Source of the DNA: Nageia nagi
Taxonomy: Eukaryota > Plantae > Pinophyta
Assembly (NCBI GenBank): GCA_050084985.1
Contig: JBITNC010000001.1
Coordinates: forward strand, 73,098,001 to 73,162,000
Length of the DNA: 64,000 bases
Direction: 5' to 3'
Translations under genes and position numbers: made by a program
Notes under the pieces: model-generated
Database searches by the model: none
Seen by the model: the letters and a program-made list of their open reading frames with translations, nothing else
What the model was told of the DNA's origin: nothing
Shown here: positions 2,861 through 25,109 of the stretch, piece after piece
Layout of the letters: every line of letters begins with the position of its first letter
Position numbering within the stretch: the stretch's first letter is position 1

Positions 2861-4334
2861 TTGCACCCATTTTGATCACCTAAAATCCCCTTTCTACGCA
2901 AAGGGAGAGCATAGATGGGTGTAATGGAAAGTATTAAGTTATTTTATTTGTCATTTCCAAAACCCACAAGATAAATCATTCATATGACTTATTTAAATAA
3001 AACAAATGAATAATGCATATTCCTTAATCATGCATCTACCCTTCCTACATACAATCTAGGCAAAAGGAATCATAAACAAGGGGTTATTTTCCATTTTTCA
3101 TTTTTTAAAACCTAAATTACACTTCCAACATTCATGAAATTTGAAATTTATACCTTCTATTTTGAGTTGATGATGTTTTAGATTTTCACACAAATTCATT
3201 GGAAATCTAGTATAAATCATTGGCATTTCAAACAAATTGCTAGCATTCCAATACAAATAATTGATGTTTAAGACAAATATCTAGTGTTTCAATTTAAATC
3301 ACTTGCACCTAATGAATATAGTCAATGATCACACAAATAAAAAACACATAATAGCAAATAGAAAATAGTATGATATTTAGTAATGATTCCACAAACTCAA
3401 AAGATAAAAAATGAAATATAAATAGCAAGAAATACCCCATGCACCTCATCTTTGGTGTAGCCTATGTGTGAGGGTTCTTCTTCTAGCACCAAAATGCTTA
3501 CTCAAAAAATAAACCTACAAGCATGCAAAAATAAAAATTGTCACAACCAATAGAAACTCTTTATTAATCTTTGAATAAACCTCAATTTTGATTACAAGTT
3601 GCCTTGCAATAGAGGGCTTCTATACAATGTGTAATATAGGCCTCTTGGAGGCCTTCCTTTGCTGATGTATTCAAGCTCTATATACCATTTAATTGCACCT
3701 ACAACAAGAATAATTTTGATTGCTTCTTTCTTGCTAACTCCCTGGCTTCTTTTTGCTTTGATCACTTGCTAGTCTTGGAATCCTACACATACATAGGCCA
3801 AGAACCCATCAAACATACCTGCTCATGCTCTAATATTATAATAAATAAATATGAAATAAACATGCATATAAGCAAAAAAAATAAACTAAAATGTACTTAG
3901 CAATCTGGATATAATTCAGCAACGTAAGGTTGCATTTCATCTTCTCACACCCCCTTTTTCTCTATGGGAGGGTCTTATTTATAGATTTTCTAAGGTACTA
4001 TTAGTTGCTATTATGGAAGGCAAGATCAGATGAAAAAATCTCATCGAACCTTGTCATGGAATATATTTGCACAAAAAAAATATGCAATCAAGGATGACTC
4101 ATCCTTGATCTATTAGCTTGTTTCCTTGGGTGCCTGATTTTTCTATTTTTTTCTTTGTGTTTTCTATTTTTAAGATCACTAGCGATTATCTATCAGGCAC
4201 CAATGACTAGGTATGATTGCCAATGATTGTACTGGATCATCAATGACTAGGATACTTTGGCAAACTTTATTATTTACCTACAATTTTATTCCCCTCTTTC
4301 ATTTGTTGAAAGAGGGGTCATTTTTAGGTGTCGA
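2861..4334 (-). repeat. Probable gypsy LTR remnant
   Basis: Non-coding stretch next to the pol remnant. Its minus-strand start GACACCTAAAAATGACCCCTC and end AAAATGGGTGCAA resemble Tat/Ogre LTR termini. No partner LTR in the window. Confidence 0.4.
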
Positions 4335-4704
4335 AATCAAGAGTCAATGCATAATAGAATATCAACAAGCCAAGCATGAATATGGATGAAAGATATTTTC
4401 TTGAGTGATAATAAGATTCCAATCCTAATGAGAAATGTTTAGAAACACCTAAGTGTAGGGTACTGATTATCGAGATATAATCTTAACAAGCTTTTCTAGG
4501 TTAGAGATACTTACATTTATATCAAGCGTGAGATTACCATTTGACCCCTCTAGTATAGGTTCAATTCATTTCAATGTACCTAACATAAGAATAAGAACAC
4601 AACTTGAGAAATATATAATAATAAGCTAAAATATGATTGAAATATGATAAATCATGTATGTAATGTTACACCTAATTTGGACCATGTTAAGGGGACCACT
4701 TTTA

Positions 4705-5400
4705 GGTGTTAAGACCATCATCTTTGTATTTTATTTTGAAAATTCATTTACATCCAATGGCCTTCTTTCTAGGAGGATGTCTTACCAACTTCCATGTACT
4801 ATTTTTTATTAATGCATCATTCTCAACCTTCATACATGATGTCTAATGTGATAGCTTGATGGCTTCATGAATCATTTCAGGTTCGGGAGTATTCACCATT
4901 GTGCTCATTAGTGTCAAGTTCACTTCCTCACGATCCATGCTTTTTGTTCTTATTCGAGAAGTAGGAGTTTCTAGTGGAGCACTCAAGTTTGAATCCTATA
5001 GTGTATTATGGTACCATTTATGTCTTATGATATTATCAAGTGGCAAATTTATAATTGGATATTCTCTCTCATCATCTTCATCATCAAGATTAATAATTGG
5101 TCCATTGTTAATTTTAGGTACTACTGCAAGTGGACTAAATGAAGATTCATTAGTCTCATCAGAAATTACATCTTTGGTTATATAAGTCTTCCAATTATTA
5201 GGATCCATGAGTTTATATCCTTAAGATTTTCTATTTACAATGTTTGTATAATTTTTCCAAATGTGGGCAATAGAATTGATATGGTTGATTATTCTAACCA
5301 ATAGGAATGGTCATTAACTCAAATGGATCTAGATGATGTTGCCAGATTTTGAAAAAACATGAGATAGCTTGATATTAATGAATTCCATGAAACTAGAAAG
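4705..5400 (-). mobile_element. Ty1/copia pol fragment (post-integrase SH3-like region and RT start)
   Basis: GYKLMDPNNWKTYITKDVISDE (copia GYxLxDP...SRDVxFDE) followed by ALIKNSTWKLV...KAIGCK*IFKIK. Confidence 0.75.
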
Positions 5401-7129
5401 TATCTGATTGATCATCAAATGTGATAGTCTTTAAAGGGTATGCTTTGGTAATAGTTTGGATGCATTCCTAGAAAATGCATTAAGAATGAAGTCCTTCGAG
5501 TTTCAAGAACATTGTAAAACTAAAAGTGTGTCACCAAAAGTATTTTTCCTAGTGGCTAATCAGCTCTTATAAATGAAAATTAGGATTTTAAAATTTTAAA
5601 ATTGGCTAATATGTGGACCCTCAAAAGGGGGGCATTCTCCCTAAAATTATAGTAAGTAATAATTTTTTGTATCCAATCGTAAAAAAAGTCAACATATGGT
5701 ATGTATCCAATTATACCTTTTATTTTAAAGGCTATAATTTCACAAAATTTTGAAACTAATTTGCCTTAGTTTATACAATTTTTTTTGTGTCAATCCTTAG
5801 TAATAACCCTATTTGTTGGGTTTTGAGAAAGTTCATTTATCTTGAAGTAGGCTATATTATGATAAAATGTACTAGTAAAGAGTTTCATCAGGTTTTGGGA
5901 AAATGAATGAATAAAACATCATCGAACTCCAAAAAATTTCTCTTTAATGAAGTTGCTACCCTTCTAGATGTCTTTGAAACATCTCAAACATGTCAAAACT
6001 TAGTCATTGAGGGAATAACTTCCCTACTTAATGCAAGTTGCAATTTTTATAATATTTTGCCCCCTTTCATTGACTATTTTGAATAATCAAAATAGTCAAT
6101 GAACCATATAATAGAAATTAAATAGACAACATGCATTGAGCAAGGGTGGTATGGGATGGTAAATAACTCATAAATATCCTTTTAACCATGCAAAATGATC
6201 TTCAAGTATCAATCAGTCAAAAAACTCAAATCTTGTTGGCTAACTCATACTCTTACTGATTGTACTCCTTTACTCATCCATCACACTTATCAGGAAACCT
6301 CATTTTCTAGATGTAGATAGTTCATGGGGATCCTAAATCTAAATACTAATCAATGATTTATAAAGAAAACTCTTTTAACATTCCCTTGATTGATTTTCAA
6401 CCAAAAATATACTAGAAAACATGATAGTATTAAAAATATAATGGTCTAATAACCAAAATTATGGGACAACTCTTCTAACAAAGAATATTATAGTTAGGTA
6501 CTTGTAAAGTAGTCATGATAGTAATCAAGTAATTATAGTAGTTTGAGTTATCATATATTATGGTGTGAATAGATGGTAATTAGTTGCTTGGGATGTAGGA
6601 CTTCATAGGTAATGGTAAAATATCAGAGGTTTATTCAAAAGATATATAAATCTGAAGCATACCCCCTAGTGTTACCAAAATAGATCTACCTCTATTTTAG
6701 AATATAGCTAATTACTCATATCAACCTTTTTGGTATTTAATAACCATTCATGTTTCTAAGAATAACTCTATAAGGTATTTTTCAATTCAATGAGAAAAGA
6801 ACAAAATATTACCTTAGAAAGTAGAATGTACAACTTTTAGGAATCAGGTGAGGGTAGGGTGGGTGTACCTCTCCAAGAAAATCCATTTTGTGTGACTTTT
6901 ATTAGTAATATTCAAACATGAAAACCTAGAATAAGATAAGTTTAAAACACATTGGATCTACTTCTAATCTAAAATTTTATATACAAATCCTACAATTTGT
7001 AGAACTGTAGAAGATGATATCGAATACAGGAACCTTCTAATGATATCTTTATTGATCCAGTATTCTAGTAATTATGTCAAAGACAATAACTAATCTTTAA
7101 AAGATGAATTCCAAATATCCCCCAATATT

Positions 7130-10100
7130 TCTTAGGTCCAAAATATTTGCTTATGTTGTGCCACATACACTTCTTCAACATAGCCATTAAGGAATGCACT
7201 TTTCACATCCATGTGATGCACATTCCAATGATTATGGGAATCCAATGAAAGCACCATTTGGATTGTCTCTTGCCTTACAATATGAGCAAAAGTCTCCTAA
7301 TATATGTCATACTTTTATGTGAACCCTTTTGCAACCAATTGTGCTTTGTACCTTTCAATGGAACCATCACTATTCCTCTTGATCTTGTAGATCCATTTAA
7401 ATCCAATGCATTTCCTATTTTGGGGCAGCTCACATAACTCCCATGTGTCATTCTTGATAATGGAAGAAATCTCTTCATTCATAGCCTTCATCCACACTTT
7501 GTTAGAACATGCTTGTTCAAAACAACAAGGCTCATAATCATCAAATTTAGTAACTTTATAAGAACTAGAAACATGATCATTGGAATTAGAATCCATTAAA
7601 GTATAATTTACCACATCACCCTTGGGCTCACCATTATCTTCATCTCTTAACATTTGCAAATTTTCTAGGCTTTACAAAGTAGCATATAGTTCCTTATGTT
7701 GACTCCTTTTCAACCTTCTAGAAAAAATTTGGTCCAACATTTGAGAGAGGGATGATATTTTAACACATTTTTACCTTTTATTGACTGATTTACACTTGCA
7801 ATTGGTGATGAAGGTGAAGAAGAACCATGTTGTGGACTTGAAGATCCCATTTATGAAGAGGGATCAAATCTAGGTTGAACTTGATTGTGTGAAACATGGC
7901 TAGGCCGAATACTTCCTTGGTCATTTGAAGCATTTTCTTCAAACATACCATCATCAACAACAACCTTTTGATATTTTTTATACTTCCAACTTCCCCCTTC
8001 ATCAAAAATGGTATCTCTAGACACTATAACTTTGTGAGAAATTGGATTAAAAAATCTATAAGCTTTGGATTGTTCGCTATAGAAAATAAAAATACAATTC
8101 TCACTCTTAGAATCAAGATTTTTTCTATTCTCATCATTCACATGAACATAAGCAAGACAACCAAAAACTTTAAAATATTTCACACTTAGCTTCTTTCTGA
8201 GCTAACTCTCATAAGGAGTAATATTTTTCAAACTCCTTGTATGACTCCTATTTAAAATATAAATAGCAATCTAGATAGCTTCATCCTAATAAAAATTACA
8301 CAAACCTTTTGTGTGCATCATACACCTTGCCACCAAAGTCTAGTTCTTTCTTTCAACCACTGCATTGTGTTGAGGTGTGTATGGTGAAGTCAATTGCCTC
8401 TTAATGTTGAAATCTCTACAAAATGTCATAAAATCATTAGATAAAAACTCACCACCATGATTAGTTCTTAAACACTTAGTTGTATGCCCACATTGGTTCT
8501 CAACACTAGCTTTAAAAGTCTTGAAGCACTCAAATGCCTCATATTTGTGTTTAAGAAAGAATACCAAATAATATCTTGAAAAATCATCAATAAAGGTGAG
8601 AAAATAATAAGCTTTACCCATACTTTATGTTTACATTGGTCCATAAATATCACTATGCACCAATTGTAGAAGAGATTGGTCCCTTCATGCTTCATTATTT
8701 GGAAAATACCCCCTTACATGTTTTTCAAATCACACCCTTCCCACACTTTATTAGTATCTTGGACCTTCAAAAAATCATAAACAAGTGTAGACAAAAGCTT
8801 TAAACTCTAAAAATTCACATGTTCAAACCTCAAATGCCATAACTATCATCAATGCTCACACAAGTAAAACCTCCCCCTTGCTCCACAAACTTGATGGGAA
8901 AAAGCTTATTTTTATTTCATTTTTACTATAGTGACCAACCTTTCACCTCTATTCTTATTATATATCTTGCACATTTTATCTTCACAAACCAATTTAAAAT
9001 TATTTTTCAGCATTTTTCCAACACTTAAAAAATATTATTTCAAATTAGGATCAAAACGAATACTTTTTACCTTCATAGTACCTTTCTTAGTAGGAACCAA
9101 CATTTCCCCCTTTACAATCACCTCCAAATATTTTTCATCCACAAGTTTGATGCTAGAACTAAATGAATGATCAAGATATGATAGAAGCTCCTTCTTTCTG
9201 GTCATGTGGTGTGAACAACCACTATCAAGAACCCAAGTTTCATCCTTTTCTTCTTGTGAAAGAAGTGCTTTGGCTCCATGATTCTCCTCTTGAAAAATAG
9301 AAAGAAACAAGGCATCTTCTTCATAGGAATATTCTTCTCCATAATCTTCATAGGAATATTCTTTCCCATAATTCATTGATGTATTATTTTGCGAGACTTG
9401 TTTAATCCTACACTCTCTCTCAAAATGGCCAAATTTGTTATAATGATAGCATTGCACATTCCTCTTGTCTCTTCCTCCACCTCTTGTAATATATCACCCT
9501 TTAGTACTTGCATTTACACTATTTTCTTAATCACCATATGAAATTTAATCTCTTCCTCTTCCTTTTCTAGAAGAGCCTCTTCTTCCTCCTCTTTCATTTC
9601 GACCTCTACCTTGACCTCTTCCATTAGTATTATCATTCTCTCTAGTTAAGAAAGATTGTTCTTCACTTGTACCAACATTTAACCTTCTTAAAAATCTCTC
9701 TTCTTGAGATTTGAGAGATCCAACCAATTGATCAAACTCCATAGTGGAAAGATCTTTGGTTTCTTCAATTACAAGAGCCACATTGTCTCATTTTGGCAAT
9801 AAAAGTCCACAAGAATTTTTTAATTACCAAGGATTTGTCCAAATCATCACCAAGGGTGGCCATTTTGTTCACTATGGATTTTAGCCTTACACAATAATCA
9901 CCCACACTCACATTTTCATATTGTATGAGACTCTCAAAATCTCTTCTAAGGGTTTGAGCTTCACCTTCTTCACTTTGACACTTCCTTGGTATCCTTCTTT
10001 CAAGGTTTTCCCTGCATCAATCATGATTTTGTGGGTTGAAATTCTTGGACAAATTCTCTTATCAAGAGCATCTTGGATATGTGACAGCCAAAAAATTCTT

Positions 10101-10945
10101 TTATCAAGAGCATCTTGGATATGTGACAAAGCCAAAAAATTCTTCTTCTTCTTCTCTTTGGTTTCCTTCTTTGTATCTTCACTTAAGACACTCCAATCAT
10201 CTGGCTCTTTGTATCCATCTTCAATAATGTCCCATAATTATTTACCTTTCAAGAGATTCATCACCTAAATGCTCCAATATTCATAATATAATCCATCAAA
10301 TTTTTGGATTGGTATTGAGTTTGAGATATTTTCCATGATAGCAAGTCTTCAACATAACTTGGATCTACAAAAGAAATTCTTTCCAAACCTTTTTGCAAAA
10401 TACTCATAATTTTTAAACCTAACAAAACTTAATATGGATCTACTTATTCGGATACCAAAGTGAAGTTTTAATTACTTTATGATAATGTAAAAGACTTATA
10501 GAATCATCATACATTCACATTTGCATTACACAATTAGAAAATTGACACAAATTTGGAAAATATAGTGCAATTATTGCTATGACATTTTGTCAAATAATTT
10601 GCTTTACAAGTATAGGGTGCAATTTACAATTTACACCAAATGATTACACAATCCAACCCAAAAAAAATTTTGGAACTCTTATTTATACATATTGATGCTA
10701 ACCAAATGAAAATAGTAAATAAAATGAACTAAAAAATATGAGAAACTAAAGTGAAACTACTTGGCAGTTTGCCTAAACTGCCTAGGAACTGACAACCTAA
10801 AACGTGATCGTGTTTCAAGCCAAATGTGTTGGGTGGGTGCATTTCCCAAACATGGTAGTGTTTTATTTTCAAATGCAGTGGGGGATTGCATTTTGTCAAT
10901 AAACACTTGTTTTCAAGTTTTGAGCTCAAATTTTAGATCCTAACA
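7130..10945 (-). mobile_element. 3'-truncated Ty1/copia retrotransposon: 5' LTR, PBS, gag-PR-IN-partial RT
   Basis: gag zinc knuckle (CYHYNKFGHFEREC), protease WVLDSGCSHHM, integrase (TFIDDFSR...GGEF...PYTPQHNAVVERKN), RT (KNDTWEL; HMDVKSAFLNG). Disrupted by stops and frameshifts. Confidence 0.93.
10461..10945 (-). repeat. 5' LTR of the copia element; tRNA-Met-type PBS at 10446-10457
   Basis: Minus strand reads TGTTAG...CTTCA followed by TGGTATCCGAAT, upstream of gag. Confidence 0.75.
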
Positions 10946-13854
10946 AGGTTTGTTTGCAATACTTAAGGCATCTATCTTAAGATTGGTAACGTTCATACAA
11001 AGATAAACACATCAATATGGATACCTTTCGACATTTTAATGTATGTATTTTAGATGTATAAGCTAATAGCACCCTTAAAAAAGTGTAATTTTAATAATAT
11101 TTCTATAACAATAAATATTATATTTATTATACTTCTATATGATAATATTAAATATTATGTATTTGAGTATTTAATAAATAAATATTAAAAAAAATCATTA
11201 AATAACATTTTGCATAAATATAAAACTAAACATGCATCAATTAAATGATAATGAATATCATAATGAGAATTAGTAGAGCTAGTGATAAGATCAATGAATT
11301 AAATTTTTTTTTAAATAAATATTATTGTTCCAATAATTTAAGTCTTTCTTCTTGATCTTTCCTTTTAAAACTCATTTTCTTGTCTTTAGTTTTTCATATT
11401 CATATGGAAATGGTAGTGAGATTCTTAATCCATCCAAGGATATGGTGTTGAGATTCAATGTGTTAGACTTATGATTTATATATTGTCAAATCTCATGCAA
11501 GATGTAATGAAAATTGTTATACACATGACCTTTATATAAGTTTAGTAAGAATAATATAAGTGATTATGCATCAAATTGTACCTTATGTAATTATCAAAAT
11601 CTACAATAACATATGTTGCTAGATATAGAGGTGCACTTCTAGATTTGTATATTATACTTTAAAGATACCTTAAAGCATCATTTACTAGCCTATTACCAAT
11701 CCATTATTTCATATTTAATACCACTCTTGCATCCTTATCATCAAAATTTCAATTTACAATTCATCATTATTGTTTTCTCTTGTATTACTAATCCATGTTT
11801 TCATATCAATGTAACCTACAATCGAATGATGTGGTTAATATAATTTATTTTTGTTATAACTTTATACATTATAATTTATTGAAAATATATGTATATATTC
11901 TTCAAACTCATTTCTATAATTTATATTAGGAGATAAGTTTATTCTTTTCACCAACAAGAAGTTGGATTCGCATCTCTAATATTTGTGAAAAATTATCAAA
12001 TCTTCATTATTTATTATTATCACCATGTTATCAAAAAACTATTCAAGAGTTAATATGGTAGAAAATAATTTCCACAATAGCTTTTTATATGTTTCACTTA
12101 CATATGGATTTCTATTCATAATAAAATATGATTATCCTCCCACTAAAATAATTGATCACCCTCCAAAATATATATTATGATATTAGGAAAATGCTTGATG
12201 AAGTCATGAACCTATATGTTCAAGCATTTTGTGACTAATGAAGCTTATATTATTAATCAAAATATACTTATAAGTATTTATGAACTTGAATCATGTTTTC
12301 ACCCAATTATGCAATTTTACTTGAGCATTATTCTCATACCCATAACCTTGTAGATGAAAGCATATAAAACAAGAATGATCATATTTTTAGCAATACCCTT
12401 GAACCCCATATGTACCTAAGAAAACCTTAAATTGTAGGATAAGCATATATTTTTCCTAATTAGTGTGTCTATTAAATATATTTTTTTAGGCCTCAAATAC
12501 CACCTTGACCATTTCCATAGGTTTTGCGATATCCCTAGGTTCTATATTTGAGCCTCCAAGCACTTCATGCTTGAAGTTTGGGGGAAGTTGAGGGCCTTTC
12601 CTAACCTACGTATAATCTAATATTGATTTGATATATTTTTTAGTTGGAGTATTACATAAGGATTTCTATAACAGGGTAAGTACAGGAAGATGGGTCCATA
12701 AAATGGCTAAAAAGTGGACATATTTTCCTTGATTTTTAGGTTTCATCATAATTGATCTCAACTTTTGAATTCCTTAGAGATAGAATCTTGAAAAATATCA
12801 CTAGGATGAAAATGTAGTGCTTGGAGTGTAGTTTCCAAATATGTAATTTATTGCAATACCTAGTTGATAGAAATTGATTTATGATAGGTACTTCTAAAAG
12901 CTATTATTTAAATTGTATCATTTTATGAGCATACCATGGTCTTCTATGAAAAGCATAATTTGACCTAAAATATAATTATTTTTTAAATCCTTTTGTAAAA
13001 AGATACCTAACACATTGAAGATTGTGTAGGATATTTTTTCATGAATATGTTTTTTTATTAATTTTTTACTAGTCGTAATTGTTATTTCAAAAAGTACAAA
13101 TCTACAGCATGCATAATTTGACATAGAATTATCATTTTTTAATTTTTTTATTTAATAGAGAATTGTATGTAGATTATTGACAGATAATTATTTTTCTTAA
13201 TTCCCCCAAAAACAAAAGTTATTAAAAAAGTCATAAAACCTAATTTTTTGAGTTTAAGGATGAGTTTCAATGAAAATTACTTTATAAATAGGAAATATAA
13301 TCAAATTGTTAAAAAAATTACATATTTATAATATAGACTCTTTGACCTGTAATGGATTTTAATTTCATGAAAAAACTTCTCAAAACACTAGATCTAACAT
13401 ATGTTAGAAGTCTATATTTGTCCCTACCACTACCATGAACAAGAAGGTGTAGGTCCAAGGCTAATACTTGGTCCACCAAGCCTTTTCCAAACCTAGGGCC
13501 GAACCTAAATTCAAATAATGAAATTTCATTATGTTTTTCATTAAAAATAATAAAATTTCATTACAAACAAAATTTTATTCTAGTTGTACCCATTATTGTC
13601 AACAATACTTTGGATAGTACTTTATCCAAATTATGCATCATTCTATCTAAACCTTGCATCACCAATAGCTTCAAAAGTGACATTTTTGCAATTTTATAAT
13701 GCAAAATTATTGAGAAGGTCTTTAGAATCCATTTTTTTATCTCTTATCAAAGGTGGTAACTATTTGTAGGATTTTTGAACGTGAAATATGAATATTTAAT
13801 GGTGAAAGAAAGTGTTTCCAATATTTGATTTTGAAGAAATTCTTGAGTAATCAC

Positions 13855-16800
13855 ATGGGTTCAAAATATCATCAAACAAAGAGAGCAAGGAGGATATTGA
13901 CACCTGAAAAAATTCAAGCGAATAAAGAAAAGGAGGCAAAAATATAAAGGGATAAACATGCAAAGATTAAAGCATCAACCTCAATTGTAATTGAGCAGGA
14001 AAACATTGAGAACGTAATTGAAGAGATGTTCACATGGATGATGCAAGTGTGGAATATGTAAATATGATAGAAGCTTCAAATCCTATAAGTATCTCTTCAA
14101 ATCCAATATTGAATGAAGCTTCAAATCCTAGAAGTGCCTCTTTAAATCCAACATTGAATGAACCTTCAAATCCACCAGTGAATGAAGCTTCAATTTGGAT
14201 AATTATGGATACAAATCCAGGTCTGCCTTCAGAACCTCCTTTGAATGACATGTGAAATGTGAATATTAAATCAAATTTAAATATGCCTTTCACCCCTTCT
14301 TTTGATTATGTAGATGATATTTATTCTAATCATGAGGAAAATGAAACAGTAAATGATACTAAAAATTGTAGTTTTAATAATTCTTTGGATAATATTTTTT
14401 TCAAATTTAGAGCAATAGATTAGATAATATCCTTGGTAAGAAATCTTGGAGACAAATAAGAAGATATGATAATATGGTATATGATCAATTTTTCTCTAAA
14501 CAAACATTAGGTTTTCAATGTCAACTTCTATTGCAATTAATGAAAATTATGAAAATGAGTAAGGTAGTGAAAGCTTTAGGCATTTGTGTGAAGAAGGATG
14601 AAACCCTTAAATAAGTTATATCCATTATTGCTAGTGCCATTGACTCTATAATAAATAAGATTTGATCTAAAGATAAGAATGCAGCACGTCAAGCTATAAC
14701 AACAACTTTAGTTAGTAAAACAACTTCAAGTAAAAAAATCATAGGTAAGGTTAGTGGATTTCCAAACATTAATCGTAAAACTTTATAAAGAGTTGCAAAG
14801 AGAAGACAAAGTATTAAAATATATCCACTCAACCAATGTTGGAGTTTTAGTGGAAGAATCCCATGTTCTTACATGAAATTGAATAACGAAAATAAATCTA
14901 TAATTGAAAAAATTTGGAATGATAATATTAGGGTTTCATCTAATACTAGAGATGTTTTGAAACTAAAAGTAGGATCAAAAAATCATGATCCTCATGCTAA
15001 ACACCTATTAGATATGAATCAAATTGCATTTTATGATAAATGTTTAAGTGAATCATTATTACCATTTAAAATTGGTTAAACATCATTTGAAAAATGCAAA
15101 ACTTGGTATGTGAAAATTAACAAGCAAAGAGTATCATGTTGTTGTAAGACTCACATGCAATTTAGATATTATTATGATGTTTTTCGATATATTCCTTGTA
15201 CTTTGCATACTAATGATTTGATGCAGGAATGTAATATTACTAATATGCCTTCTAAAAATATCAATGAATTTATAGCAAGGTTATTTTGTGAACCTCCTAA
15301 TGATCAATTATTTTATTTGAAGGAATGTATTTCTGGAGAATGTATTGGATGTGGTAACTTTTCATTGTTAGGATGATGTATATATGAAATAAGTGAACAT
15401 TAATTTGGACAACAATTAGTGGACATTAAAAAATTCAAGAATATTGAGTATGCTTTAAAAGATGGAAAAATTGGAAAGCATGTTGATTTGGTCATTGAAA
15501 ACATTAGTGTGCATACATTTATAGATGATTTTAAGAGTTGGATACTACCCAAATATGTACAACACTCCCAACATGCTCAATGGCTTGATAGTCAATTTTT
15601 CTTATGTAGAAACATATTTTCAATTAGAACTATATTATCAATGGTTGATTTTGCATAAAACTATACTCTTGCACCATAAGAAGAAATTCAGTCTCAATAT
15701 TACAATTCAATGCAAGTTTCCATTTTTGTTCATATTGTATATAGACATGCAATTGATAGTATTGAAGATAATAGACAAATTTTGTGGGAGTACCATTTCT
15801 ACGTAAGTGATAACCGATTACATTAACCCAAGTTTATCCAATATTGCTTCAAGGTATTTTATGACAATTTGAAGGAAAGAGAAATTCAAATGGCACAATA
15901 TTTAATTTGATCAGATAATTGTACGAGATAGTTTAAAAATGTATGTATGTTTTATTGGCTAAGTAGGGTTCACAACAACATATGAGGAGTTCTTTTAAGT
16001 TGGACATGGTAAAGGAGAACATGATGGAGTTGGTGCATGCGTTAAAAGAGCTCTTGCTAGAGAGCAACTAAAATTTGTAGAAGCGACCAAATTTATAGAT
16101 TCAAGTGCAATTGTGGATTCGTGTAGTACAAAACTATCTAGAGGATTAAGTGAAAATTCTACAATTCAACTATTCTTTTAGTTAGTTGAGGAAAAGGATA
16201 TTCGAATTCATCATGATTGTGAGACAATCAATGGATTAGCAAAGTGGCGTTCATTTAGGAGATCAAATACAAGCACATGGACTTTATGGACAAGAGATCT
16301 TGCATGTTTTTTGTCAATTTTGTATTGTAGGTGATTGAGAATCATGTACAAATAAAGAATGGGTTGAGGAATGGAAACAAAGATATTTGACACCTATGCA
16401 ATCAAATGATCAATAGGAAACATGAATTGCATATGAGAATCAAGTTTTTGCATCAGATGACTATGATCATGTTTTAGATCTTGTACAAGAAGGTAATTTA
16501 ATTTGTTATATTATATGAATGCATAATTATGTATATATGTTAGTTTTATATATGTTATACTTTATTCATACAAATTTTGGCTGTAAGACATGTGTATGCT
16601 ATTGTGGCACCTAAGAGAAATGAAGGGGGAATAGAGTATTGGTTAGCTCGATGTGTTGAAACAAAACATAAGTTAACTCATACTCAAGTTGATGATGATA
16701 GTTTTGAGTATCCAACAAGTTCTGTGGTGGTTGTTGGCACATGCTATGAGCATATATCATAAGACATAATGGTTTTCCTGTATACAAAGATTATCAAATA

Positions 16801-16971
16801 GATAAGAAGATTATACACTACTCACACTTGGTACTGGCAACAAATATAAAACTTGATAGATTTCATGGGAGACCTCGTAATAACGTGTTGTGAAAAACTT
16901 CGATGGAGGAACATGAAACAATTATAGATGCATTACAAAAAAGAGATGATGCATATGGTAAAATAGATTGA
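13855..16971 (+). pseudogene. Sola2-like DDD transposase pseudogene
   Basis: Motifs in order: SCCCKTH, CISGECIGCG, VDFA*NY (D at 15647), *SDNCTR*FKN (D at 15914), GHGKGEHDGVGACVKRAL (D at 16023). One apparent GT-AG intron near 16493-16587. Many stops at W/Q/E/R codons. Confidence 0.8.
14065..14250 (+). repeat. Coding repeat (NEASNP/NEPSNP units) in the transposase N-terminus
   Basis: Recurring GAAGCTTCAAATCC / GAACCTTCAAATCC units; see ORF 14034-14255. Confidence 0.6.
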
Positions 16972-17008
16972 AAAACACAGGTACTTGTTTATAACTTAAT
17001 ATTCTTAT

Positions 17009-17064
17009 CCCTAATCCCTAGTCCCTAATCCCTAACCCCTAATCCATAACCCATAATCCCTAAC
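17009..17064 (+). repeat. Telomere-like heptamer array, 8 x CCCTAAY (degenerate)
   Basis: ccctaat ccctagt ccctaat ccctaac ccctaat ccataac ccataat ccctaac, followed by a ~70 nt C/T-rich tract. Confidence 0.85.
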
Positions 17065-17135
17065 CCCTTTCCTCCTCCTCTTCTCCCTCCCCTTCTTCCC
17101 CTCCCCTTATTTCTCCTCCCATACCCTTCCCCTCA

Positions 17136-17208
17136 ATTGTCTTAGCTCAGTTGGTAGAGCGTGTGGCTTTTAACCACGTGCTGATGGGTTTGATTCCCAT
17201 AGACAACA
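17136..17208 (+). tRNA. tRNA-Lys(UUU), probably a pseudogene
   Basis: 73 nt cloverleaf: A-box TAGCTCAGTTGGTAGAGC, anticodon arm TGTGG-CTTTTAA-CCACG (TTT at 17169-17171), T-loop GGTTTGATTCCC (TTCG changed to TTTG), acceptor ATTGTCT/AGACAAC. Resembles plant nuclear tRNA-Lys-TTT with C>T/G>A changes. Confidence 0.88.
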
Positions 17209-17214
17209 TGTACC

Positions 17215-18700
17215 TTCTAACTTAAATGACCTTATGTACCTATAAACTTCTATCCTTAGGTAAGTTCATAAGGATAATAAAGACTCAAATTGAACCAATC
17301 ATTCTATGATGAATGCACTCTGAATTTGATTAACAATAAACTTTTTCAACATTGTTAATGTTGTCTACTTTTTTATGATTTAGTCCTTAATTAATCCTTA
17401 TTCTATTCCTTCTTAATTCTTAAATTTTTTTGTCTTCTATTATCGTTATTAGTTCACATTTGAGACTAGAAAGTTTGGAAGAGAATAATATATTGGTGAA
17501 TCACTCTAAAGATTATAATAATTATCATTCTAACTTATTATAGTCATGTAAATAAAATAAACCACCTAAGGCTTCTTGAGTATGATTAGAAATAAAATAT
17601 GCATCTTTCCAAATTACTTAAAGACATCTACATTTGTCTCTTCTATTTTTATTTCCTATAACAGAACTTGATTTGTGGTCTTAATTATTTTCAATATATA
17701 TATATATATTTTGTCATTTAGGCATCTTATACTCTAGATGAGGATCTTCATCATTTAGATTTGTAAATATTTTCTTCCTATCGCCCTCTTAACATTAGAG
17801 AGGAATGTATCATGTATCGTGTAACATTAGGGAGGAATATATCATCCTCTTAACTATTTGGGTTCCTTCATCTTTCTCTACCTCAATTTCTAAGAGTCAT
17901 AGTTCCTAGTTAGATAATGTGCTACTATTTTTTTAATATCTAGATCTAAAATTTATGTTATGAGGTTTTTTGTAAGAGGCCTTGAAGAGGAAGTCTTTTT
18001 ACTAAATAAGTTTTATTGGGAGGTTTAAAATTCTTGTTCAAGGAAAACTTCTTTATTAGTCATTAAGGGGGCCATTCAATTTTTTGTACAAAATCAACCT
18101 CTTGGGAGGAAAGTAGGACTTTTACCCCTTAGGGTTCTATTTCTAGGTGTAAACATTTATAAATAGTACTAGTAGAAATTTCTAGAGTTGGAAGGGTTAT
18201 CTCCTACTTTGGAGTCCTCTTATATTGGGTGTCACTATCTCAAGAGGGTCCTACTTATTGTTGGGTTTGCTTGAGGTTTAGTTCTAGAATCTCTCCTTCT
18301 TCCATATCTTGATATTTTTTATGAAAAGTATTTATGTCCTAACGGAGGAGCTCCATGGTACTAGCGGAACCAATGTCATCTTCCTATGGAGGTCCTTTTG
18401 GCCAACCTATTTGTGGAGCTAGTTTATACCTTGAAGTTTCAATTTTATGAGTGTATTTTCAATTTACCATCAAGCATATAGTACCTTCATGAGATAAAAT
18501 CTTGGAATATTTGATAAACTTCTTAAGATATTATTAATGTATTCCAATAACTAACTTAGTATGAGATCTAATGTGTAAAAGTAATCCAAAATACTTGATT
18601 ATTGATTCATATAATTTTCCCCCTAGTGATAATTTCTAAGGAATCTAAACATCATACCATAATAAATTCGTTTAACTTATGAGCTAACTTATTTACTTTA
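17215..18700 (-). mobile_element. Highly decayed LINE fragment (ORF1 end and ORF2 endonuclease start)
   Basis: Minus strand near 17750 reads MKILI*SIRCLN (decayed MKIxSWNIRGLN), then L*EIK and a GDF-like motif. Upstream is a low-complexity ORF1-like tail (MEEGEILE). Confidence 0.55.
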
Positions 18701-19266
18701 GAGAATGTTGTATAGGAAATTGATAAATTACAAGTTATCTATATTTTGTGTACGTAGATTAAATAACTTTTTATCATGAGCTAATTCTACTAGATTAACT
18801 TGGTATTTTTACAAATTCCCCTATCATAATCACTAAATTCTCCTATCATAATTACTAAATTGCCCTATCATAATTTAACTTGGTGTACATTAAATTGTCC
18901 ATGTATGTTCAACATAACAACATAAAAACATCAAAATAACATGTAATTCATTGACATGCCTCCACAAAAATCTATGATAAAATCATGCATATATATCAAA
19001 AAATAATGTATAGTCCATAGTCCCTAATAATGTCCATAATAACACCCATGGTCCATAACAATGTCCATGATCGTGTAAGAATGTACATCTAGTCTCAGAC
19101 AACACATACATGTACATGTATATATATATCAAAAAATACAAAGCACATGTAGTCTTAAGTTCTCAAAAATGTATATAACAATAGACCTAAGACATGCATA
19201 TATTTAACAGAATGGACCTAAGTCCTCAAAAATGTATCTACTCATATCTAAGTCCATAGGATCTAT

Positions 19267-21154
19267 CTAACTACATCCACCCACCCTATCATAATCAATC
19301 TTCCTTTTAGTTCCTCGCAATGAAGGTGAAACTGTAGAGTCCTCATGATGCTAGATACAAGATAAAGAAAAGTAAAATCAGATTTTTAAAAATTTGATTC
19401 AATTTCTTGATAAATTATATTGTTCACTAATCTATATATATGTACATGCCATGTAAAAAAGTATAAAATTTACCACATCATGATGCTTCTCTACACGTTC
19501 AGCAACCATTGGATGTTGTTGTGCAACCTGTAGTGTATCTGATGTATTAATACAAAATGTATCATCAACTAGATCCTACAAGATCAAATAAAGCAAAAAT
19601 CGAAATAAATACATGTTACTTATGTTATAGATCAAATAAAGCATCAAATAAAATGCATGTGTAAACTAATTATTTTAACAATATTACCTCAAATCTATCA
19701 AGTGGCTTAGAGTGAAATTGTGTCTCCCCAGTAACTTGGTGATCAGGATTCGTCTTAATGGTGATATCAACCTGCAAACATATATACAATTTACATGTTA
19801 GATCTAGTGAAAAATAAGAGTACATAATAACGACTAGTATTTAATTAAGAAAATACATACAACGGGTGGTAGATCATGAACAATAGTCACCATAGGAGTA
19901 GTACGTGAACATCCCATGATCTACCTGTAATAACAAAAATATTATATGATAATGCACAGACATGTATACAAAAGTGAAATACTTGACATTACAATTTAAA
20001 CGAGTAGTAAATTTGATTACCTCAAAGGGTGCCTAATCTTGTCTAGGAGTGGATATAATATGACCTCAATCATATCCATATGATGATGTAGAGCCCATCC
20101 TCTGCACCAAAAAAATATAAATATAAGATTGATATATTAATTGCATAAAATTATCCTTATTAAATATAAAATGTATACCTTAAAACTACACATGAAATTT
20201 ACCTATTTAGTAGAAGGATAACCACCTAATAACATCTGCATAAAACTATCATGATCAGTATTTGCTATAGCTACACCTGGAATGGGCCCAAAACACATCT
20301 AGTGGCAATGTTAGCAAGTGTGAGGCATCATCGCCTGCGAGCTACTAGACCCCTCTCCATCAAATCCTCCTTGATGTCTCTCATTGAACTCAACTACCAC
20401 TCAATCTCGATAGCTGACTCAATCCCTCTAACATTGAAACCATTGCAGAACTAAGAATAGTTATAGGAATAGTATATCTAGCAGAAGGGACAAGAGGTGG
20501 AACATGCATGGGTCAATTAGGATCGACCCATGCCCTTAGCCTATCCTGTGGACAGCTAAGACCAACACCCTAAGATGATCTAATACAATGAGATATCGCT
20601 TCCATTGCCATGTGGGGCATGATCAAATACCATCTATCCCAAAAATGACGGACTATCTTAAGATGGGTACACCACCTAATACTAATTCTTTGTTTACTAG
20701 GTAGGATTGGCTTATTGGTTTTGGAATCAATGAAGTACTCAAATATTGTTTGTTTAGTAATTTTTAGGTCATTTATCTCCTTATAAGAAAGACCATCTGC
20801 ATAAAATCATCTAGCCTCCTCTCGTGATGTACAATAATGATCAATACCCTCACCCAAGGACCTAACAGTATTAACTATGGTTTGCATCATAGATACAAAC
20901 CGTGACGTATGGGGGGGAAGATCCCTACCAAGAGTATGGAGTGCACTAATTCTATCCTATAAGACATTGATATTTTGAGTAATAGTTGCTCTAAGGCGAT
21001 CCTCATCTGACTGAGGGGGTGGGGGGTTTTCATGAGGTGGACTAAAGGGTGCCTTTAGGGGGTTCTCATCATATGGACTATGGAGTGAAGATTGGAGAAT
21101 TTCATGATGTGGAGAGGGTGGATGTGGGGGATCGATAATAACAAAAGGTACAAC
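19267..21154 (-). pseudogene. Multi-exon accessory gene of the Sola2-like element, unknown protein
   Basis: Six GT-AG-bounded exons: 21154-20203, 20101-20021 (81 nt), 19924-19861 (64 nt, 1 bp shift), 19771-19688 (84), 19575-19474 (102), 19350-19267 (84, ends TAG). Introns are phase 0 and the last three exons are fully open. Possible non-coding first exon ends at the donor at 24507. Confidence 0.75.
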
Positions 21155-21300
21155 CTACACACATTAACAATTTACTAAGTATAAACAAAGGGCACTTGTA
21201 TATATAAATTCAAAATACGAAATAATATGAACTTAAGTGAATATACATAATCTAATCTATGAAAGCATAATTATCTCAAAAGGATATTTAATATGATATA

Positions 21301-21422
21301 AATACAAATGTTATAAATAAATGATGTAAATGCAAATGTTAAAAATAAATGATGTAAATGCAAATGTTAAAAATAAATGATGTAAATACAAATGTTAAAA
21401 ATAAATGATGTAAATACAAATG
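21301..21422. repeat. 28 bp minisatellite, about 4.4 copies
   Basis: AATRCAAATGTTAAAAATAAATGATGTA repeated in tandem. Confidence 0.9.
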
Positions 21423-21463
21423 ATATTCATCACAATATTTAAAATTGATAATGTTCATTCAAT

Positions 21464-21550
21464 ACACCTAGATGTAGTTGGATTGAAGTCAAGAAAAAAG
21501 GGTACACGTTTTTATAAGAAAAGGGTACATAGTTCATGAAAAGGGTTTTT
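21464..21550 (+). pseudogene. PPR E/E+ junction fragment
   Basis: TPRCSWIEVKK then AGGGTACACGTTTTT (RVHVF after a frameshift), matching the PGxSWIEV...VHxF box. Confidence 0.65.
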
Positions 21551-22299
21551 TAAGCAGGTTAGACTATGTTAGAGCTGATATGAGGAGGACCATCTATGAT
21601 ATGTTTAATGTAACTTATAAGATGGGAATCTGGGCAATGGAAATGGGCATGTGGGATCCCTTTGTTCCTCTTGAAACTCTTTTATCGTCTTGATAAAGTT
21701 GAAATTCTAGTGGGAAAGGAATCCTCCAAGAGGATGGGAGGTAATGAAACCCTAAGCAATAAAGGAAAGACAAGTCTTTTCATGATATAGTTAAGGAAAG
21801 GGGATTGACAATCTAGCACTAATCCTCCTCTAAAAAACTCTTTTAATGATTGTAAATCCTAATCAAAATAAAAATGGATGTCTAACAAAGAGTAATTTGC
21901 CACTTATCTCAAATAAAAAGTAAACTTATCTCAAAGTTGAACTAATTATGCCATAAAAAGAGAAAAGAATGGTTACTACATATTCTCATAATATTGTTGA
22001 TTTCTAGGTTACTTTAAATAGAGGTGATAATTCATCACACGTGCAAATTGTAAGACAATATAGTTGCATCGCCCATCCAACTCAAAATTATGCTTAAAGA
22101 ATGTATATGCAATGTCAATGTAAGTGTCATAATCAAGATATAGAGTAATAAGGGATATAGAATGGGATTCTTGAATTGAGATCATTGGCCCTAACAACCT
22201 TATGGAAGTGATGGTTTATCCATTGATCTCATGGACTTCATAATCATGATCTACCTCATGGACATGTTGACCCTTTGGTTGGTTAGAATGAGAAACTTA

Positions 22300-23700
22300 A
22301 TAATTCTTGGTATTGTTTATTTTATTTTCCTATGCAAGCCAACTTTGATAACATAATATCAAATTGACACCTCTCCTTTGCTAATTACTAAGTCCAAAAT
22401 ATGATGGAAGCATATCCAATGCGTATTAGAGATAATTTTGGTTGGGATATTTTGTTGGATAAGTAAAAGCCACTATGGAAAACCATGTAAAACAAAGGGT
22501 AATTTGCTACTTCTAGGGAACACAAATCAACTACTAAGATATCAAAAATTGGGAACTACTCATTTCTCAATTTATCAAATAGTGAGATTTATGTAAGTCA
22601 TTATTCCAAAGGTTATTATTTTCCATTATTTTCTAATGAAGATGATAGAGATTATATTTTACAAGAAGGTCCATGGTTCTTTAGTCTAGATCAAGATTAT
22701 TTATGAAGCCATGGTATTTCGATTTCAAGTTAATGAAGGAAAATGCCATTAGTCTATGGAATGAAGGGATTCTTGATTCAACTAGTAACTCAATAGGAAT
22801 TTGTATTTCCATGTTGAATCATGCTTATGAGTGTAAATCCTTGGTATACACTAAACTCTATACCCACATGGACTTGGAAGCCCCTCTTCTCACAAATATC
22901 TTGATCAATCTCCCCGATGAGGGTCTAGAATGAGAATAACCCATCAATTATGAAAGCATCCCCATCACATATATGATACATGTTTTGAATACAACAATCT
23001 AGATAAAAGTTTTCCACATAGCATCCAAAAATAGCCTAAACCTAAGCCTATGGAGGATGGTTTCCACCATCCCAAGAGAAAAAACCATTTGGGTAAAACC
23101 CTTCAATAAAAAAAAAAAAAGAGACTAGAATCCTAATCCTAGTACTCCATACTAGACCCTAACATGAATGTCTCACTCGAAAATAGTTTTCATAGCCTAG
23201 TCAATGAGGGCACACCCTTGGATGGCCCTATACTTCCCTAAAGTAGTTGTTCGCCCAAATCCATAATGGATGATAAAATAATAGACATTATTCCATTAGA
23301 CAATAATCCTCTATTCTTAGTATATAAGATACAACATTAATAGTTAATCCTTATTTACCTTTTTCTTTATAATAAATTAACAATAATATGTTGAAAAGCC
23401 CTCAAATCATAAGTCTCGCTACGAAAGAAATCCAAATTCATGTGGGAATTATTTCTCCAACTCCTCACAAGTAGAATTACTAAGGATCCTCTATTAAACA
23501 AACCCCAAACAATGTAAATACATCATAAATTGGAAACTATGGAAAAAGAAGCCATCAAGATAAAGATAAATTACAAGAAGTTGCAAGAGAAGGCATAGGA
23601 GGGGGAACTTTGTAGCAATTAGAGAATATGATAGATCTAAAGAAGGATAAATAGATGAATGATTATCTACTCATAGAAAACTTGAGGCCTCTATTTCTTT
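22300..23700 (+). mobile_element. LINE ORF1 (DUF4283-type) remnant
   Basis: KGYYFPLFSNEDDRDYILQEGPWFF and MKPWYFDF motifs typical of plant L1 ORF1. Confidence 0.7.
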
Positions 23701-23748
23701 GATCTCCCTAGTGTTCTACTTTTTTTAACTAAAATATTTGTAGGAAAA

Positions 23749-23944
23749 GGGGAATTTGTCGCAACAATCCTCTTTTCATTGGAACCTACAAATTTAAGGT
23801 CCACATGCATGTATTACGTTCTTCTTTCAAATATTTATTTTGAAGTGGGCACTTGGGATAATATTCAAAGAGTAAGGACATTGATGAAGGATAGTTGGAT
23901 TCAAGTTGACAAAATGGTACATATTTTTCTCGTACGAGCCAATG
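23749..23944 (+). pseudogene. Captured PLS-class PPR E/E+ domain fragment
   Basis: Frame reads GEFVATILFSLEPTN...YYVLLSNIYFEVGTWDNIQRVRTLMKD-SWIQVDKMVHIFLV. Confidence 0.85.
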
Positions 23945-24262
23945 TTGGGTTGAAGTTGACAAACGCATAAATGTTTTTTCTTGTATACGATGACCAATCT
24001 TGGATTGAAGTTTACAAAAGGGTACATATTTTTCTTGTATGAGCCTAATGTTTTGGGTTGAAGTTATTCCAAAAGGGTAAATGTTTTTCTTGTACGAGAT
24101 GATCAATGTTCCAAATTGAAGTTGACAAAAGGGTACATGTTTTTCTTGTACAAGCCAATGTTCGATTGAAGTTGACAAAAGGTTAAATAGTTTTATTGTA
24201 TACATGATGATCAGTGTTGGATTGTTCAGTTGAAAAAGGGTACTTGTTTTTTGTTTTATGAT
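23895..24262 (+). repeat. About 7 tandem 50-56 bp units derived from the PPR E+ WIEVDKRVHVFLV coding segment
   Basis: Consensus TTGGATTGAAGTTGACAAAAGGGTACATGTTTTTCTTGTA..., alternating short (GAGCCAATG) and long (GATGATCAATG) endings. Confidence 0.85.
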
Positions 24263-25109
24263 ATGTAGTTCTATTAAAGTTAAGTAAACTATTAACTTTT
24301 TAATGTAATTATTCATTTTTTTAATTAAACTAAACTAATTATGCAAGAAAAGCGTGAAATGCAAAAATTAAAGTACACTAAATTTGCAAATAAAAAACTA
24401 AATTAAAATACACCCATAAAACTAAGATATTAAAGTACACACCCATAAAACTAAATTTATAAGTATTTTTGCAAATAAAAAACAAGAGAAGCAAGAAATA
24501 GCATACCCAGAGAGCTGAAGAAGGTCGTGTGGCGGATGCAGAGCACATGGTGGCGGGCCTCCTCAAACCGAAATTGTGTTCATTGCAGGAGAGAATGAGG
24601 GCCTGCAAGCTATCTTCATGGGGTTTATATTCTACAAAACAAAATTTGGGTTCTCAAGAACTGAAATTTCATTTTTGAAAACCAAAATTTCATTCCTTAA
24701 GAACAAAAATTTTTGTTTTTAAAGATTGAAATTTTATTTCGTTTTCATTCGAGAGGCAAAAAGAAACGAAAGTTCGATCTTTAAAAACCAAAATTTTGTT
24801 TTAGTCCACCATTTTTTTTTAAGTGATGATGTCCACCTTAAGTGGATTCATCTTCTTACACTTACCCAACAAGGTGTTATCATTTTGGCATTTTTTGTAT
24901 TTTATATTCCTATATAATAATAATAATTTAATATTAATTTAAATTATAAATAACTATAATAGATATAAAAATCTAAAAAGATTATTAATTATTATTATAA
25001 ATAGTTAGCTATCATGCTTCTAATATAAAATTTATTTTCTTTCAATAATATAATGAGTTAGACAATAAACATAATCATATATATTATATACACGATGATA
25101 ATTAATTAC

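What the first reader, a model, noticed from the sequence alone, without database searches (positions are those of the whole stretch)
12674..24867. 12.2 kb Sola2-like DNA transposon in a plant, with two convergent genes
Seen: imperfect ~25 bp TIRs with GGG...CCC termini, an exact 4 bp TSD (AACA), and a transposase with a D-D-D triad (DFxENY / SDNCxxQFKN / HGKGxxDG). A second spliced gene is transcribed from the opposite end, as in MuDR mudrA/mudrB. Recalled knowledge: Sola elements have DDD transposases and 4 bp TSDs, Sola2 has GRG termini, and Sola2 is described mainly from animals as a single-gene element. Inference: this is an undescribed two-gene, cargo-carrying seed-plant Sola2 lineage that standard annotation would split into unrelated pieces.
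Basis: partly seen in the sequence, partly recalled or inferred. Interest (0 to 1): 0.92.

Follow-up and report, generated by a model that had tools for sequence, protein, structure and literature searches.

The report
Dead Sola2-type transposon in a seed plant
This 12.2 kb stretch is a long-dead copy of a Sola2-type cut-and-paste DNA transposon family that is abundant in several related seed plants; besides its ruined transposase gene it carries a tRNA-Lys gene and the remains of a second, unknown gene, which is of moderate interest because Sola2 is already reported in conifer genomes.

Summary
At 12674-24867 there is a 20/25-matching terminal inverted repeat (GGGTAAGT...ACTTACCC) flanked by an exact AACA duplication. 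Inside is an intronless-looking transposase pseudogene (14399-16965, +) with the three motifs DFA*NY, SDNCTR*FKN and HGKGEHDG.

The pseudogene has at least 14 in-frame stops and at least 2 frameshifts. It aligns (E 1e-134) to an intact 1106-aa relative from a metagenome contig. In 18-56 relatives from plants, algae and marine animals the three aspartates are invariant or nearly so, and they sit at the canonical positions of a predicted RNase H-like fold.

The motif contexts match the published Sola2 transposases of dictyostelids, read by eye only. A second copy (L029, about 74% identical) starts its homology exactly at the proposed left end and has the same tRNA-Lys(UUU) after the transposase.

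The minus-strand gene is real as a family: two unbroken relatives exist, of unknown function. Its splicing, and whether it travels with the transposase, stay unproven.

"Undescribed" is overstated. DNA/Sola-2 makes up 0.6% of the Cryptomeria genome in a published table, and two-gene Sola2 elements of 10-15 kb are known from slime moulds. First readers of this scan flagged likely copies elsewhere in this genome.

The parts
12670..12673 (.). left copy of the 4-bp target site duplication AACA
12674..12698 (+). left terminal inverted repeat GGGTAAGTACAGGAAGATGGGTCCA
   Evidence: Homology to the independent copy L029 begins here.
12714..12721 (+). subterminal GTGGACAT motif; its inverted partner is at 24829-24836
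   Evidence: The motif is also kept as AAAAGTGGA in L029. A role as a transposase binding site is inferred, not shown.
12679..14400 (+). 5' non-coding part of the element, conserved with L029; includes a 45-bp tandem repeat at 14065-14223
   Evidence: blastn 74% identity over 12679-13411 and 70-73% over 13863-14400; repeat family D9
14399..16965 (+). Transposase pseudogene. DFA*NY 15647-15664, SDNCTR*FKN 15911-15940, HGKGEHDG 16005-16028, Cys/His motifs 15137-15154 and 15326-15355. At least 14 in-frame stops, frame changes near 15985 and 16305, probable intron about 16470-16575.
   Evidence: tblastn with the intact 1106-aa protein L009:1016-4333, residues 203-1105, E 1e-134, 38% identity; motif coordinates
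17008..17130 (+). telomere-like (CCCTAAT/CCCTAAC)n run followed by a C/T-rich tract
   Evidence: Sequence. The C/T-rich part aligns with L029; the CCCTAA-type run is gapped there. L029 has a CCCTAAA-like repeat upstream of its transposase instead.
17136..17208 (+). tRNA-Lys(UUU) gene just after the 3' end of the transposase gene
   Evidence: ARAGORN; Rfam RF00005 57.9 bits. L029 has a homologous tRNA at the same place, 43.8 bits, with the same anticodon loop.
17210..18600 (.). variable spacer, not shared with more distant copies
   Evidence: Contig depth falls to about 0 in run X5 and is lowest in X1-X3. No similarity to L029.
19267..21154 (-). Remnant of a second gene, convergent with the transposase. 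The main exon 21154-20573 is 194 codons with 2 stops; candidate small exons lie at about 20037-20123, 19690-19773, 19471-19575 and 19283-19348.
   Evidence: Relatives P0077 (83% identity, tblastn E 1e-46; reads W where the window has TGA) and P0078 (53%). Low-stop frame test. Depth peaks in X5 lie on the ORF pieces. Splice sites were read by eye and not verified.
21293..21432 (.). 28-bp tandem repeat
   Evidence: family D2
22503..22930 (+). weak DUF4283-like fragment, a possible captured piece
   Evidence: Pfam E 0.016, below the family's cut-off; not relied on
23686..24262 (+). captured PPR E-motif fragment, amplified into repeats of about 105-110 bp
   Evidence: Pfam PF20431 E 5.8e-9, 36.5 bits, above its cut-off of 27.3; repeat families D4/D10; self-blast
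24843..24867 (-). right terminal inverted repeat (reverse complement GGGTAAGTGTAAGAAGATGAATCCA)
24868..24871 (.). right copy of the target site duplication AACA

Best explanation
The stretch is one old, inactivated insertion of a plant lineage of Sola2-group DNA transposons.

Inferred mechanism: a DDD (RNase H-like) transposase binds the GGG-ended inverted repeats and probably the subterminal GTGGACAT motifs. It excises the element and re-inserts it with a 4-bp staggered cut, which leaves the 4-bp duplication (here AACA).

Shown: the termini, the duplication, the homology, the fold prediction, and the multi-copy state in several plant species.

This copy can no longer make transposase. Its ends have drifted (5 mismatches in 25), so at best it could once have been moved in trans.

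In this seed-plant sub-lineage the family's conserved core is 'left end - transposase - C/T-rich tract - tRNA-Lys(UUU)'.

A second module on the opposite strand encodes a protein of unknown function. It is present in a minority of copies and is most likely an accessory or passenger gene of a sub-family. Near the right end a fragment of a host PPR gene was captured and then amplified into a minisatellite.
For: - TIR and duplication.
- Independent copy L029: its homology starts at the proposed left terminus, and it has the same tRNA after the transposase.
- Multi-copy family: 1,079 to 10,425 short contigs per run, from four coded plant organisms, lie on 15201-21200 at 85-99% identity. C>T and G>A changes predominate.
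- Transposase homology: E 1e-134 to the intact L009 protein.
- Catalytic residues: D/D/D plus K and Q are invariant in 18 relatives from moss, green alga, molluscs, echinoderms and amphioxus. In the 56-row alignment the first D is invariant and the other two nearly so.
- Fold: the AlphaFold core has pLDDT 85-95, with the three D on strand 1, just after strand 4 and on the following helix. The best PDB matches are retroviral integrase cores, IstA and Mos1.
- No Pfam family matches, as stated for Sola in PMC5751038.
- Motif contexts match Sola2_DFa-2 and Sola2_PPa-1 printed in the supplement of PMC3627910: MDFKEN / WSDGAKHFKS / W-F...HGKS..D, with similar D-D-D spacing.
- The dictyostelid Sola2 ends read GAG...CTC with 4-bp duplications.
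- Cryptomeria is annotated with 0.6% DNA/Sola-2. A Taxus gene model holds a 40-aa piece 72% identical to the window.
- Tree: the window sits with 99% SH-aLRT support in a 13-row set inside a plant-type set (86%, below the tree's 95% star level) that is apart from the animal set.
Against: - No reference Sola1, Sola2 or Sola3 sequence could be aligned by program, because Repbase, Dfam, Bao et al. 2009 and Yuan & Wessler 2011 are not held. The assignment to Sola2 rather than another Sola group rests on a by-eye comparison of about 150 core residues (roughly 27% identical) and on a RepeatModeler label in another species.
- The right terminus and the 4-bp duplication rest on this single copy.
- L029's left end reads GGA..., not GGG.
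- The tRNA was not found in the other 41 related loci, and gene 2 was found in none of the related loci.
Confidence: 0.8

Rival explanations
1. The minus-strand gene is a true second gene of the autonomous element, needed for transposition in the way the second ORF of PIF/Harbinger is. The ancestral seed-plant element would then be a fixed three-part unit: transposase, tRNA-Lys, accessory gene.
For: - Unbroken relatives P0077 and P0078 exist in other assemblies, one only 53% identical, which suggests purifying selection at some time.
- The gene-2 region is itself multi-copy in four organisms, and its depth peaks fall on the ORF pieces.
- One X5 contig joins 16468 to 20485 (short side of 21 nt, so weak).
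- Other first-stage notes on this genome describe two-gene copies with a tRNA (unchecked).
- The segment DGLSYKEINDLKITKQTIFEYF has the spacing of a helix-turn-helix (my reading only).
Against: - Its depth is only about 10-15% of the transposase part.
- It is absent from the 3.1 kb of L029 that follow the tRNA, and from all moss-type loci.
- There is no Pfam, PDB or Atlas match.
- The structure model is useless (pLDDT 42).
- There is no RNA evidence.
Confidence: 0.35
2. The minus-strand gene is only cargo: a host gene or a piece of another repeat that was captured by, or inserted into, one sub-family, like the PPR fragment.
For: - It has lower and separate depth from the transposase module, and the spacer 17210-18600 is variable.
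- The element demonstrably captures host fragments: the PPR E motif.
- It is absent from relatives.
Against: - No nested-element signature (LTRs or TIRs) surrounds it.
- The only relatives found are two short Logan ORFs. No annotated host protein came up, though the search could only see proteins of 43-136 aa.
Confidence: 0.4
3. The TIR and AACA pair is a coincidence, and the true element has other limits or belongs to another superfamily (MULE, hAT, Zator, Zisupton/KDZ).
For: - The TIR is short and imperfect. A pair of this quality with a 4-bp duplication turns up 0.13 times per shuffled window.
- The pattern search alone gives at least 2 hits in 9 of 100 shuffles.
Against: - L029's homology begins at the same base.
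- The inverted GTGGACAT motifs sit within 45 nt of both ends.
- No MULE, hAT or other transposase Pfam domain matches the intact relatives.
- The motif contexts match published Sola2.
Confidence: 0.05

Closest known systems
Sola2 group of the Sola superfamily (Bao, Jurka, Kapitonov & Jurka 2009, as cited and used in PMC3627910 and PMC4455052)
   Same: DDD transposase with DF.EN / WSDG....FK / HGK...D contexts and similar spacing; 4-bp target duplication; short imperfect TIRs; G-R-G...C-Y-C ends (GAG...CTC in DFa-2, GGG...CCC here); no Pfam domain.
   Different: Plant-type clade, separate from the animal sequences. The duplication here is AACA, not the AT-rich AWWT of dictyostelids. Carries a tRNA-Lys gene.
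Sola2-Fanzor1 chimeric elements DFa-1/2/3 and PPa-1/4/5 of dictyostelids (Bao & Jurka 2013, PMC3627910)
   Same: Elements of 10-15 kb with a Sola2 transposase plus a second, unrelated gene; a shared 5' part and a variable 3' part; 12-22 bp TIRs; 4-bp duplications.
   Different: The second gene here is not Fanzor/TnpB-like: no OrfB_Zn_ribbon or any other Pfam match. The host is a seed plant.
'DNA/Sola-2' repeats annotated in the Cryptomeria japonica genome (PMC11539532)
   Same: A seed-plant (conifer) genome in which Sola-2 is the second largest DNA-transposon class (56.7 Mb, 0.6%). This fits the thousands of contigs seen here in related organisms.
   Different: It is only a line in a RepeatModeler table, with no structure, termini, tRNA or second gene described. 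Whether it is the same family was not testable, because the organisms are coded.
MuDR (mudrA/mudrB) and PIF/Harbinger two-gene elements
   Same: Two genes in one TIR element; convergent orientation as in MuDR.
   Different: Unrelated transposase superfamily and a different duplication length. The resemblance is one of layout only.
Pack-MULE-type gene-fragment capture
   Same: A host gene fragment (PPR E motif) lies inside a TIR element.
   Different: The carrier is a Sola2-type element, and the fragment has been turned into a tandem array.

Membership tests
Sola2 (Sola superfamily) | DDD catalytic triad in an RNase H-like transposase domain | tested here: met
   The three D are invariant in alignment A4. 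In A7 the first is invariant and the other two nearly so. The AlphaFold model puts them at the canonical positions, and Foldseek hits are integrase and transposase cores. The window keeps all three D codons.
Sola2 (Sola superfamily) | 4-bp target site duplication | tested here: met
   AACA on both sides, for this single copy only. PMC3627910 states that 4-bp duplications are the Sola2 feature.
Sola2 (Sola superfamily) | termini 5'-GRG...CYC-3' | tested here: met
   GGG...CCC here. DFa-2 and DFa-3 read GAG...CTC in the supplement of PMC3627910 (poor OCR). L029's decayed left end reads GGA. The GRG rule itself is recalled from Bao et al. 2009, which is not held.
Sola2 (Sola superfamily) | transposase sequence groups with reference Sola2 and not with Sola1 or Sola3 | tested here: inconclusive
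   The comparison with Sola2_DFa-2 and PPa-1 printed was by eye only: all three motif contexts shared, about 27% identity over about 150 residues. No program alignment was made, and no Sola1 or Sola3 references are available.
Two-gene autonomous element (MuDR-like layout) | the second gene co-occurs with the transposase in most full-length copies | not testable with these tools
Depth ratios argue that only a minority of copies carry it.
Two-gene autonomous element (MuDR-like layout) | the second gene is transcribed and spliced | not testable with these tools
   No RNA run holds the stretch. The exon borders were read by eye only.

The most novel reading that the evidence does not exclude
Seed plants (at least gymnosperm-like lineages) would harbour a distinct, highly amplified Sola2 lineage. 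Its autonomous form would be a fixed three-part unit: a DDD transposase, a Pol III tRNA-Lys(UUU) gene preceded by a telomere-like or pyrimidine-rich tract, and a convergent, possibly DNA-binding accessory gene. No such architecture has been described for any Sola element, and the tRNA and the accessory protein would take part in expression or transposition.
Probability: 0.3. Interest if true: 0.6.

Novelty: new variant of a known kind. Interest (0 to 1): 0.42.

Why it matters
Sola2 is one of the least studied cut-and-paste superfamilies. No transposase structure or activity assay exists for it, and in plants it appears only as a line in repeat tables.

This element gives a first anatomical description of the plant form: ends, duplication, transposase limits, a tRNA-Lys gene conserved between two diverged copies, an optional second gene, and gene-fragment capture. 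It also shows that intact relatives exist (a 1106-aa ORF in L009; 942-943 aa P0025 and P0089) that could be tested.

It flags an annotation problem as well. A Taxus gene model fuses a transposase piece to eIF2A. The single copy in the window is itself biologically inert.

Tried and rejected
Searches that found nothing useful:
- Pfam on 40 ORF pieces of the element and on intact relatives. The only significant hit was the PPR E motif. A DUF7893 hit (E 0.008) vanished on better-preserved fragments.
- HMMER of the 84-aa piece 15404-15655 against 1.84 billion representatives found only 22 short fragments and one spurious repeat protein.
- ESM Atlas gave unnamed arthropod and mollusc clusters for the transposase fragment and nothing for gene 2.
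- PDB by sequence gave nothing.

Looking for other copies and ends:
- A second copy or fragment in the window: none.
- TIR scan of the 42 related loci for GGG/GAG-ended pairs: no convincing complete element.
- A right end or gene 2 in L029: none.
- A paralogous empty site for the flanks: none.
- tRNA genes in the other loci: none.

Other dead ends:
- The structure model of gene 2 had pLDDT 42, so it was not searched further.
- Bao et al. 2009 and Yuan & Wessler 2011 are not held.

Limits I kept to:
- For the tree, one single-frame stretch (about 15080-15979) was read with X at the stops, without joins.


Full report
**Observation.**
- The ends read AACA|GGGTAAGTACAGGAAGATGGGTCCA... on the left and ...TGGATTCATCTTCTTACACTTACCC|AACA on the right.
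- The first 8 bases of the two arms are identical and 20 of 25 match. The 4-bp duplication is exact.
- In Markov-shuffled windows, a pair of this quality with a 4-bp duplication appears 0.13 times per window. The ends alone are therefore suggestive, not proof.
- Two further facts make them convincing. First, the 8-mer GTGGACAT occurs only four times in the window on both strands. It sits 41 nt inside the left end and, inverted, 32 nt inside the right end.
- Second, an independent copy of the family, metagenome contig L029, is 74% identical to the window from 12679 onward. Similarity falls to background exactly at the proposed left terminus.
- The right end has no second witness.

**Transposase.**
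- On the + strand, one frame runs from about 14399 to 15979, a second to 16310, and further pieces reach 16965.
- An intact 1106-aa ORF on metagenome contig L009 aligns to this whole span: residues 203-1105, 38% identity, E 1e-134.
- The window copy has 12 stops in the first segment and 2 in the second. There are frame changes near 15985 and 16305, and more damage in the C-terminal part.
- Searches with the intact relative and with a profile found proteins of a moss (Ceratodon purpureus M758_1G230800), a green alga, molluscs, echinoderms and amphioxus. They also found many unnamed plant-like contigs.
- The three aspartates are invariant in the 18-row alignment. In the 56-row alignment the first is invariant and the other two nearly so.
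- An AlphaFold model of a 673-aa relative has a confident core (pLDDT 85-95). D488 lies on the first strand, D583 just after the fourth strand and D624 on the following helix.
- Its best PDB matches are retroviral integrase cores, IstA and Mos1. It is therefore an RNase H-like DDD transposase.

**Which family.**
- No Pfam model matches even the intact proteins. This agrees with the statement in PMC5751038 that Sola domains have no Pfam counterpart.
- The only reference sequences I could read are Sola2_DFa-2 and Sola2_PPa-1 in the supplement of Bao & Jurka 2013 (PMC3627910).
- Their contexts are ..MDFKEN..ELSQNFY..Q.S..., ..FSD...H.., ..WSDGAKHFKS.. and ..W.F....HGKS..D. These line up with VDFAENY..EIQSQYY..Q.S.., YVSDD..H.., WSDGCAGQFKN and W.Y....HGKGEHD of this family.
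- The spacing is alike and about 27% of roughly 150 core residues are identical.
- The same paper gives 4-bp duplications, 12-22 bp TIRs and ends that read GAG...CTC.
- Sola1 and Sola3 references, Repbase, and the founding papers are not held. Membership in Sola2 rather than a sister group is likely but not formally shown.
- The Cryptomeria japonica genome paper lists DNA/Sola-2 at 56.7 Mb, 0.6% of the genome. That is second only to MULE among DNA transposons (PMC11539532).
- A Taxus chinensis gene model (KAH9300319.1) contains a 40-aa transposase piece 72% identical to window 16005-16124.
- In a quick maximum-likelihood tree the window sequence falls, with 99% SH-aLRT support, in a 13-row set with L009, L023 and P0025. 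That set lies inside a 30-row plant-type set that includes the moss protein, though this larger set has only 86% support, below the tree's 95% star level. It is apart from the animal set.

**Copy number.**
- No public run holds the stretch whole.
- Logan contigs of four coded plant organisms lay 1,079 to 10,425 short pieces on 15201-21200 at 85-99% identity. C>T and G>A are the commonest changes.
- Depth is highest over the transposase and the tRNA (to about 17200).
- It drops to almost nothing over 17200-18600 in run X5, and to a low level in X1-X3.
- It recovers to roughly a tenth of the transposase level over 18600-21200.
- The family is therefore abundant in several species. Its conserved core ends just after the tRNA.

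**tRNA.**
- ARAGORN and Rfam call a tRNA-Lys(UUU) at 17136-17208, at 57.9 bits.
- It is preceded by a CCCTAAT/CCCTAAC run and a C/T-rich tract.
- L029 has the homologous tRNA at the same place, 43.8 bits, with the same anticodon loop and a decayed acceptor stem.
- None of the other 41 related loci has a tRNA.
- The tRNA is therefore a component of this sub-lineage, not a private capture of this copy. What it does is unknown.

**Second gene.**
- On the minus strand, 21154-20573 is one frame of 194 codons with two stops. Only 17 such regions exist in the window, against about 0.5 in shuffles.
- The 78-aa piece finds two Logan proteins. P0077 (E 4.5e-27) is 83% identical over 86 residues in a tblastn against the window and reads W where the window has TGA. 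P0078 (E 7.5e-23) is 53% identical.
- The gene family is therefore real and was once under constraint.
- It has no Pfam, PDB or Atlas match. Its model is unusable, with pLDDT 42.
- A helix-turn-helix-like spacing in DGLSYKEINDLKITKQTIFEYF is only my reading.
- Small downstream exons with AG/GT borders can be read to 19267. No RNA data could be laid on them.
- Gene 2 is not found in any related locus. Its depth is a tenth of the transposase's. Whether it is an accessory gene of one sub-family or a passenger stays open.
- Other first-stage notes on this genome describe two-gene, tRNA-bearing Sola-like elements and GGGT...ACCC families with 4-bp duplications. They are unchecked leads, not evidence.

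**Cargo.** A PPR E-motif fragment (23686-23967, Pfam E 5.8e-9) has been multiplied into repeats of about 105-110 bp. A DUF4283-like piece is below threshold.

**Verdict.**
- This is a real, ordinary-in-kind but poorly described element: a dead copy of a plant Sola2-type family.
The claims of novelty are too strong, because conifer Sola-2 and two-gene Sola2 elements are both in the literature.
- What appears new is the conserved tRNA-Lys module and the unknown convergent gene.

**Limits of the work.**
- Pieces of the broken genes were searched separately by reference.

Noticed in passing
window 17008-17208; L029 7840-7973: A tRNA-Lys(UUU) gene preceded by a telomere-like CCCTAAT run and a C/T-rich tract sits directly after the transposase gene. 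The tRNA and the C/T-rich tract are conserved in a copy that is only about 75% identical. A Pol III gene as a fixed part of a DNA transposon is unusual.
   Followed up: partly
window 33893-34396 and 43447-43933: Long inverted repeat arms (about 500 bp, 72-75% complementary) lie about 9-10 kb apart. This is probably another large TIR element (MULE-like?) unrelated to the Sola2 copy.
   Followed up: no
window 52803-52990 and 59974-60171: Direct repeats of about 190 bp (83-87% identical) lie 7.2 kb apart, with low-stop reading frames at 53763-57210 (-) between them. This is possibly an old LTR retrotransposon or another TE. A hAT-dimerisation-like peptide turned up by chance at 55159-55269 (-).
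   Followed up: no
window 37461-37630, 52075-52248, 50677-51607: Near-perfect tandem duplications of 85 and 87 bp, and a duplicated block of about 490 bp.
   Followed up: no
protein P0052 (Taxus chinensis KAH9300319.1): An annotated gene model joins an eIF2A domain to a 40-aa fragment of this transposase family (HGKGEHDG...). It is a likely annotation chimera or an exonised transposon piece.
   Followed up: partly
protein P0049 (ENA, 832 aa): A relative in the animal-type set carries a precomputed Peptidase_C48 (Ulp1-like) Pfam domain, as some plant MULE and CACTA elements do.
   Followed up: no
L029 4091-4738: The related copy has a long array of 7/14/28-bp CCCTAAA-like repeats upstream of its transposase. 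The window has a 45-bp repeat (14065-14223) at the corresponding place.
   Followed up: no
window 24684-24797: Palindromic subterminal sequence (92 bp at 78% and 52 bp at 88% self-complementary) just inside the right end.
   Followed up: no
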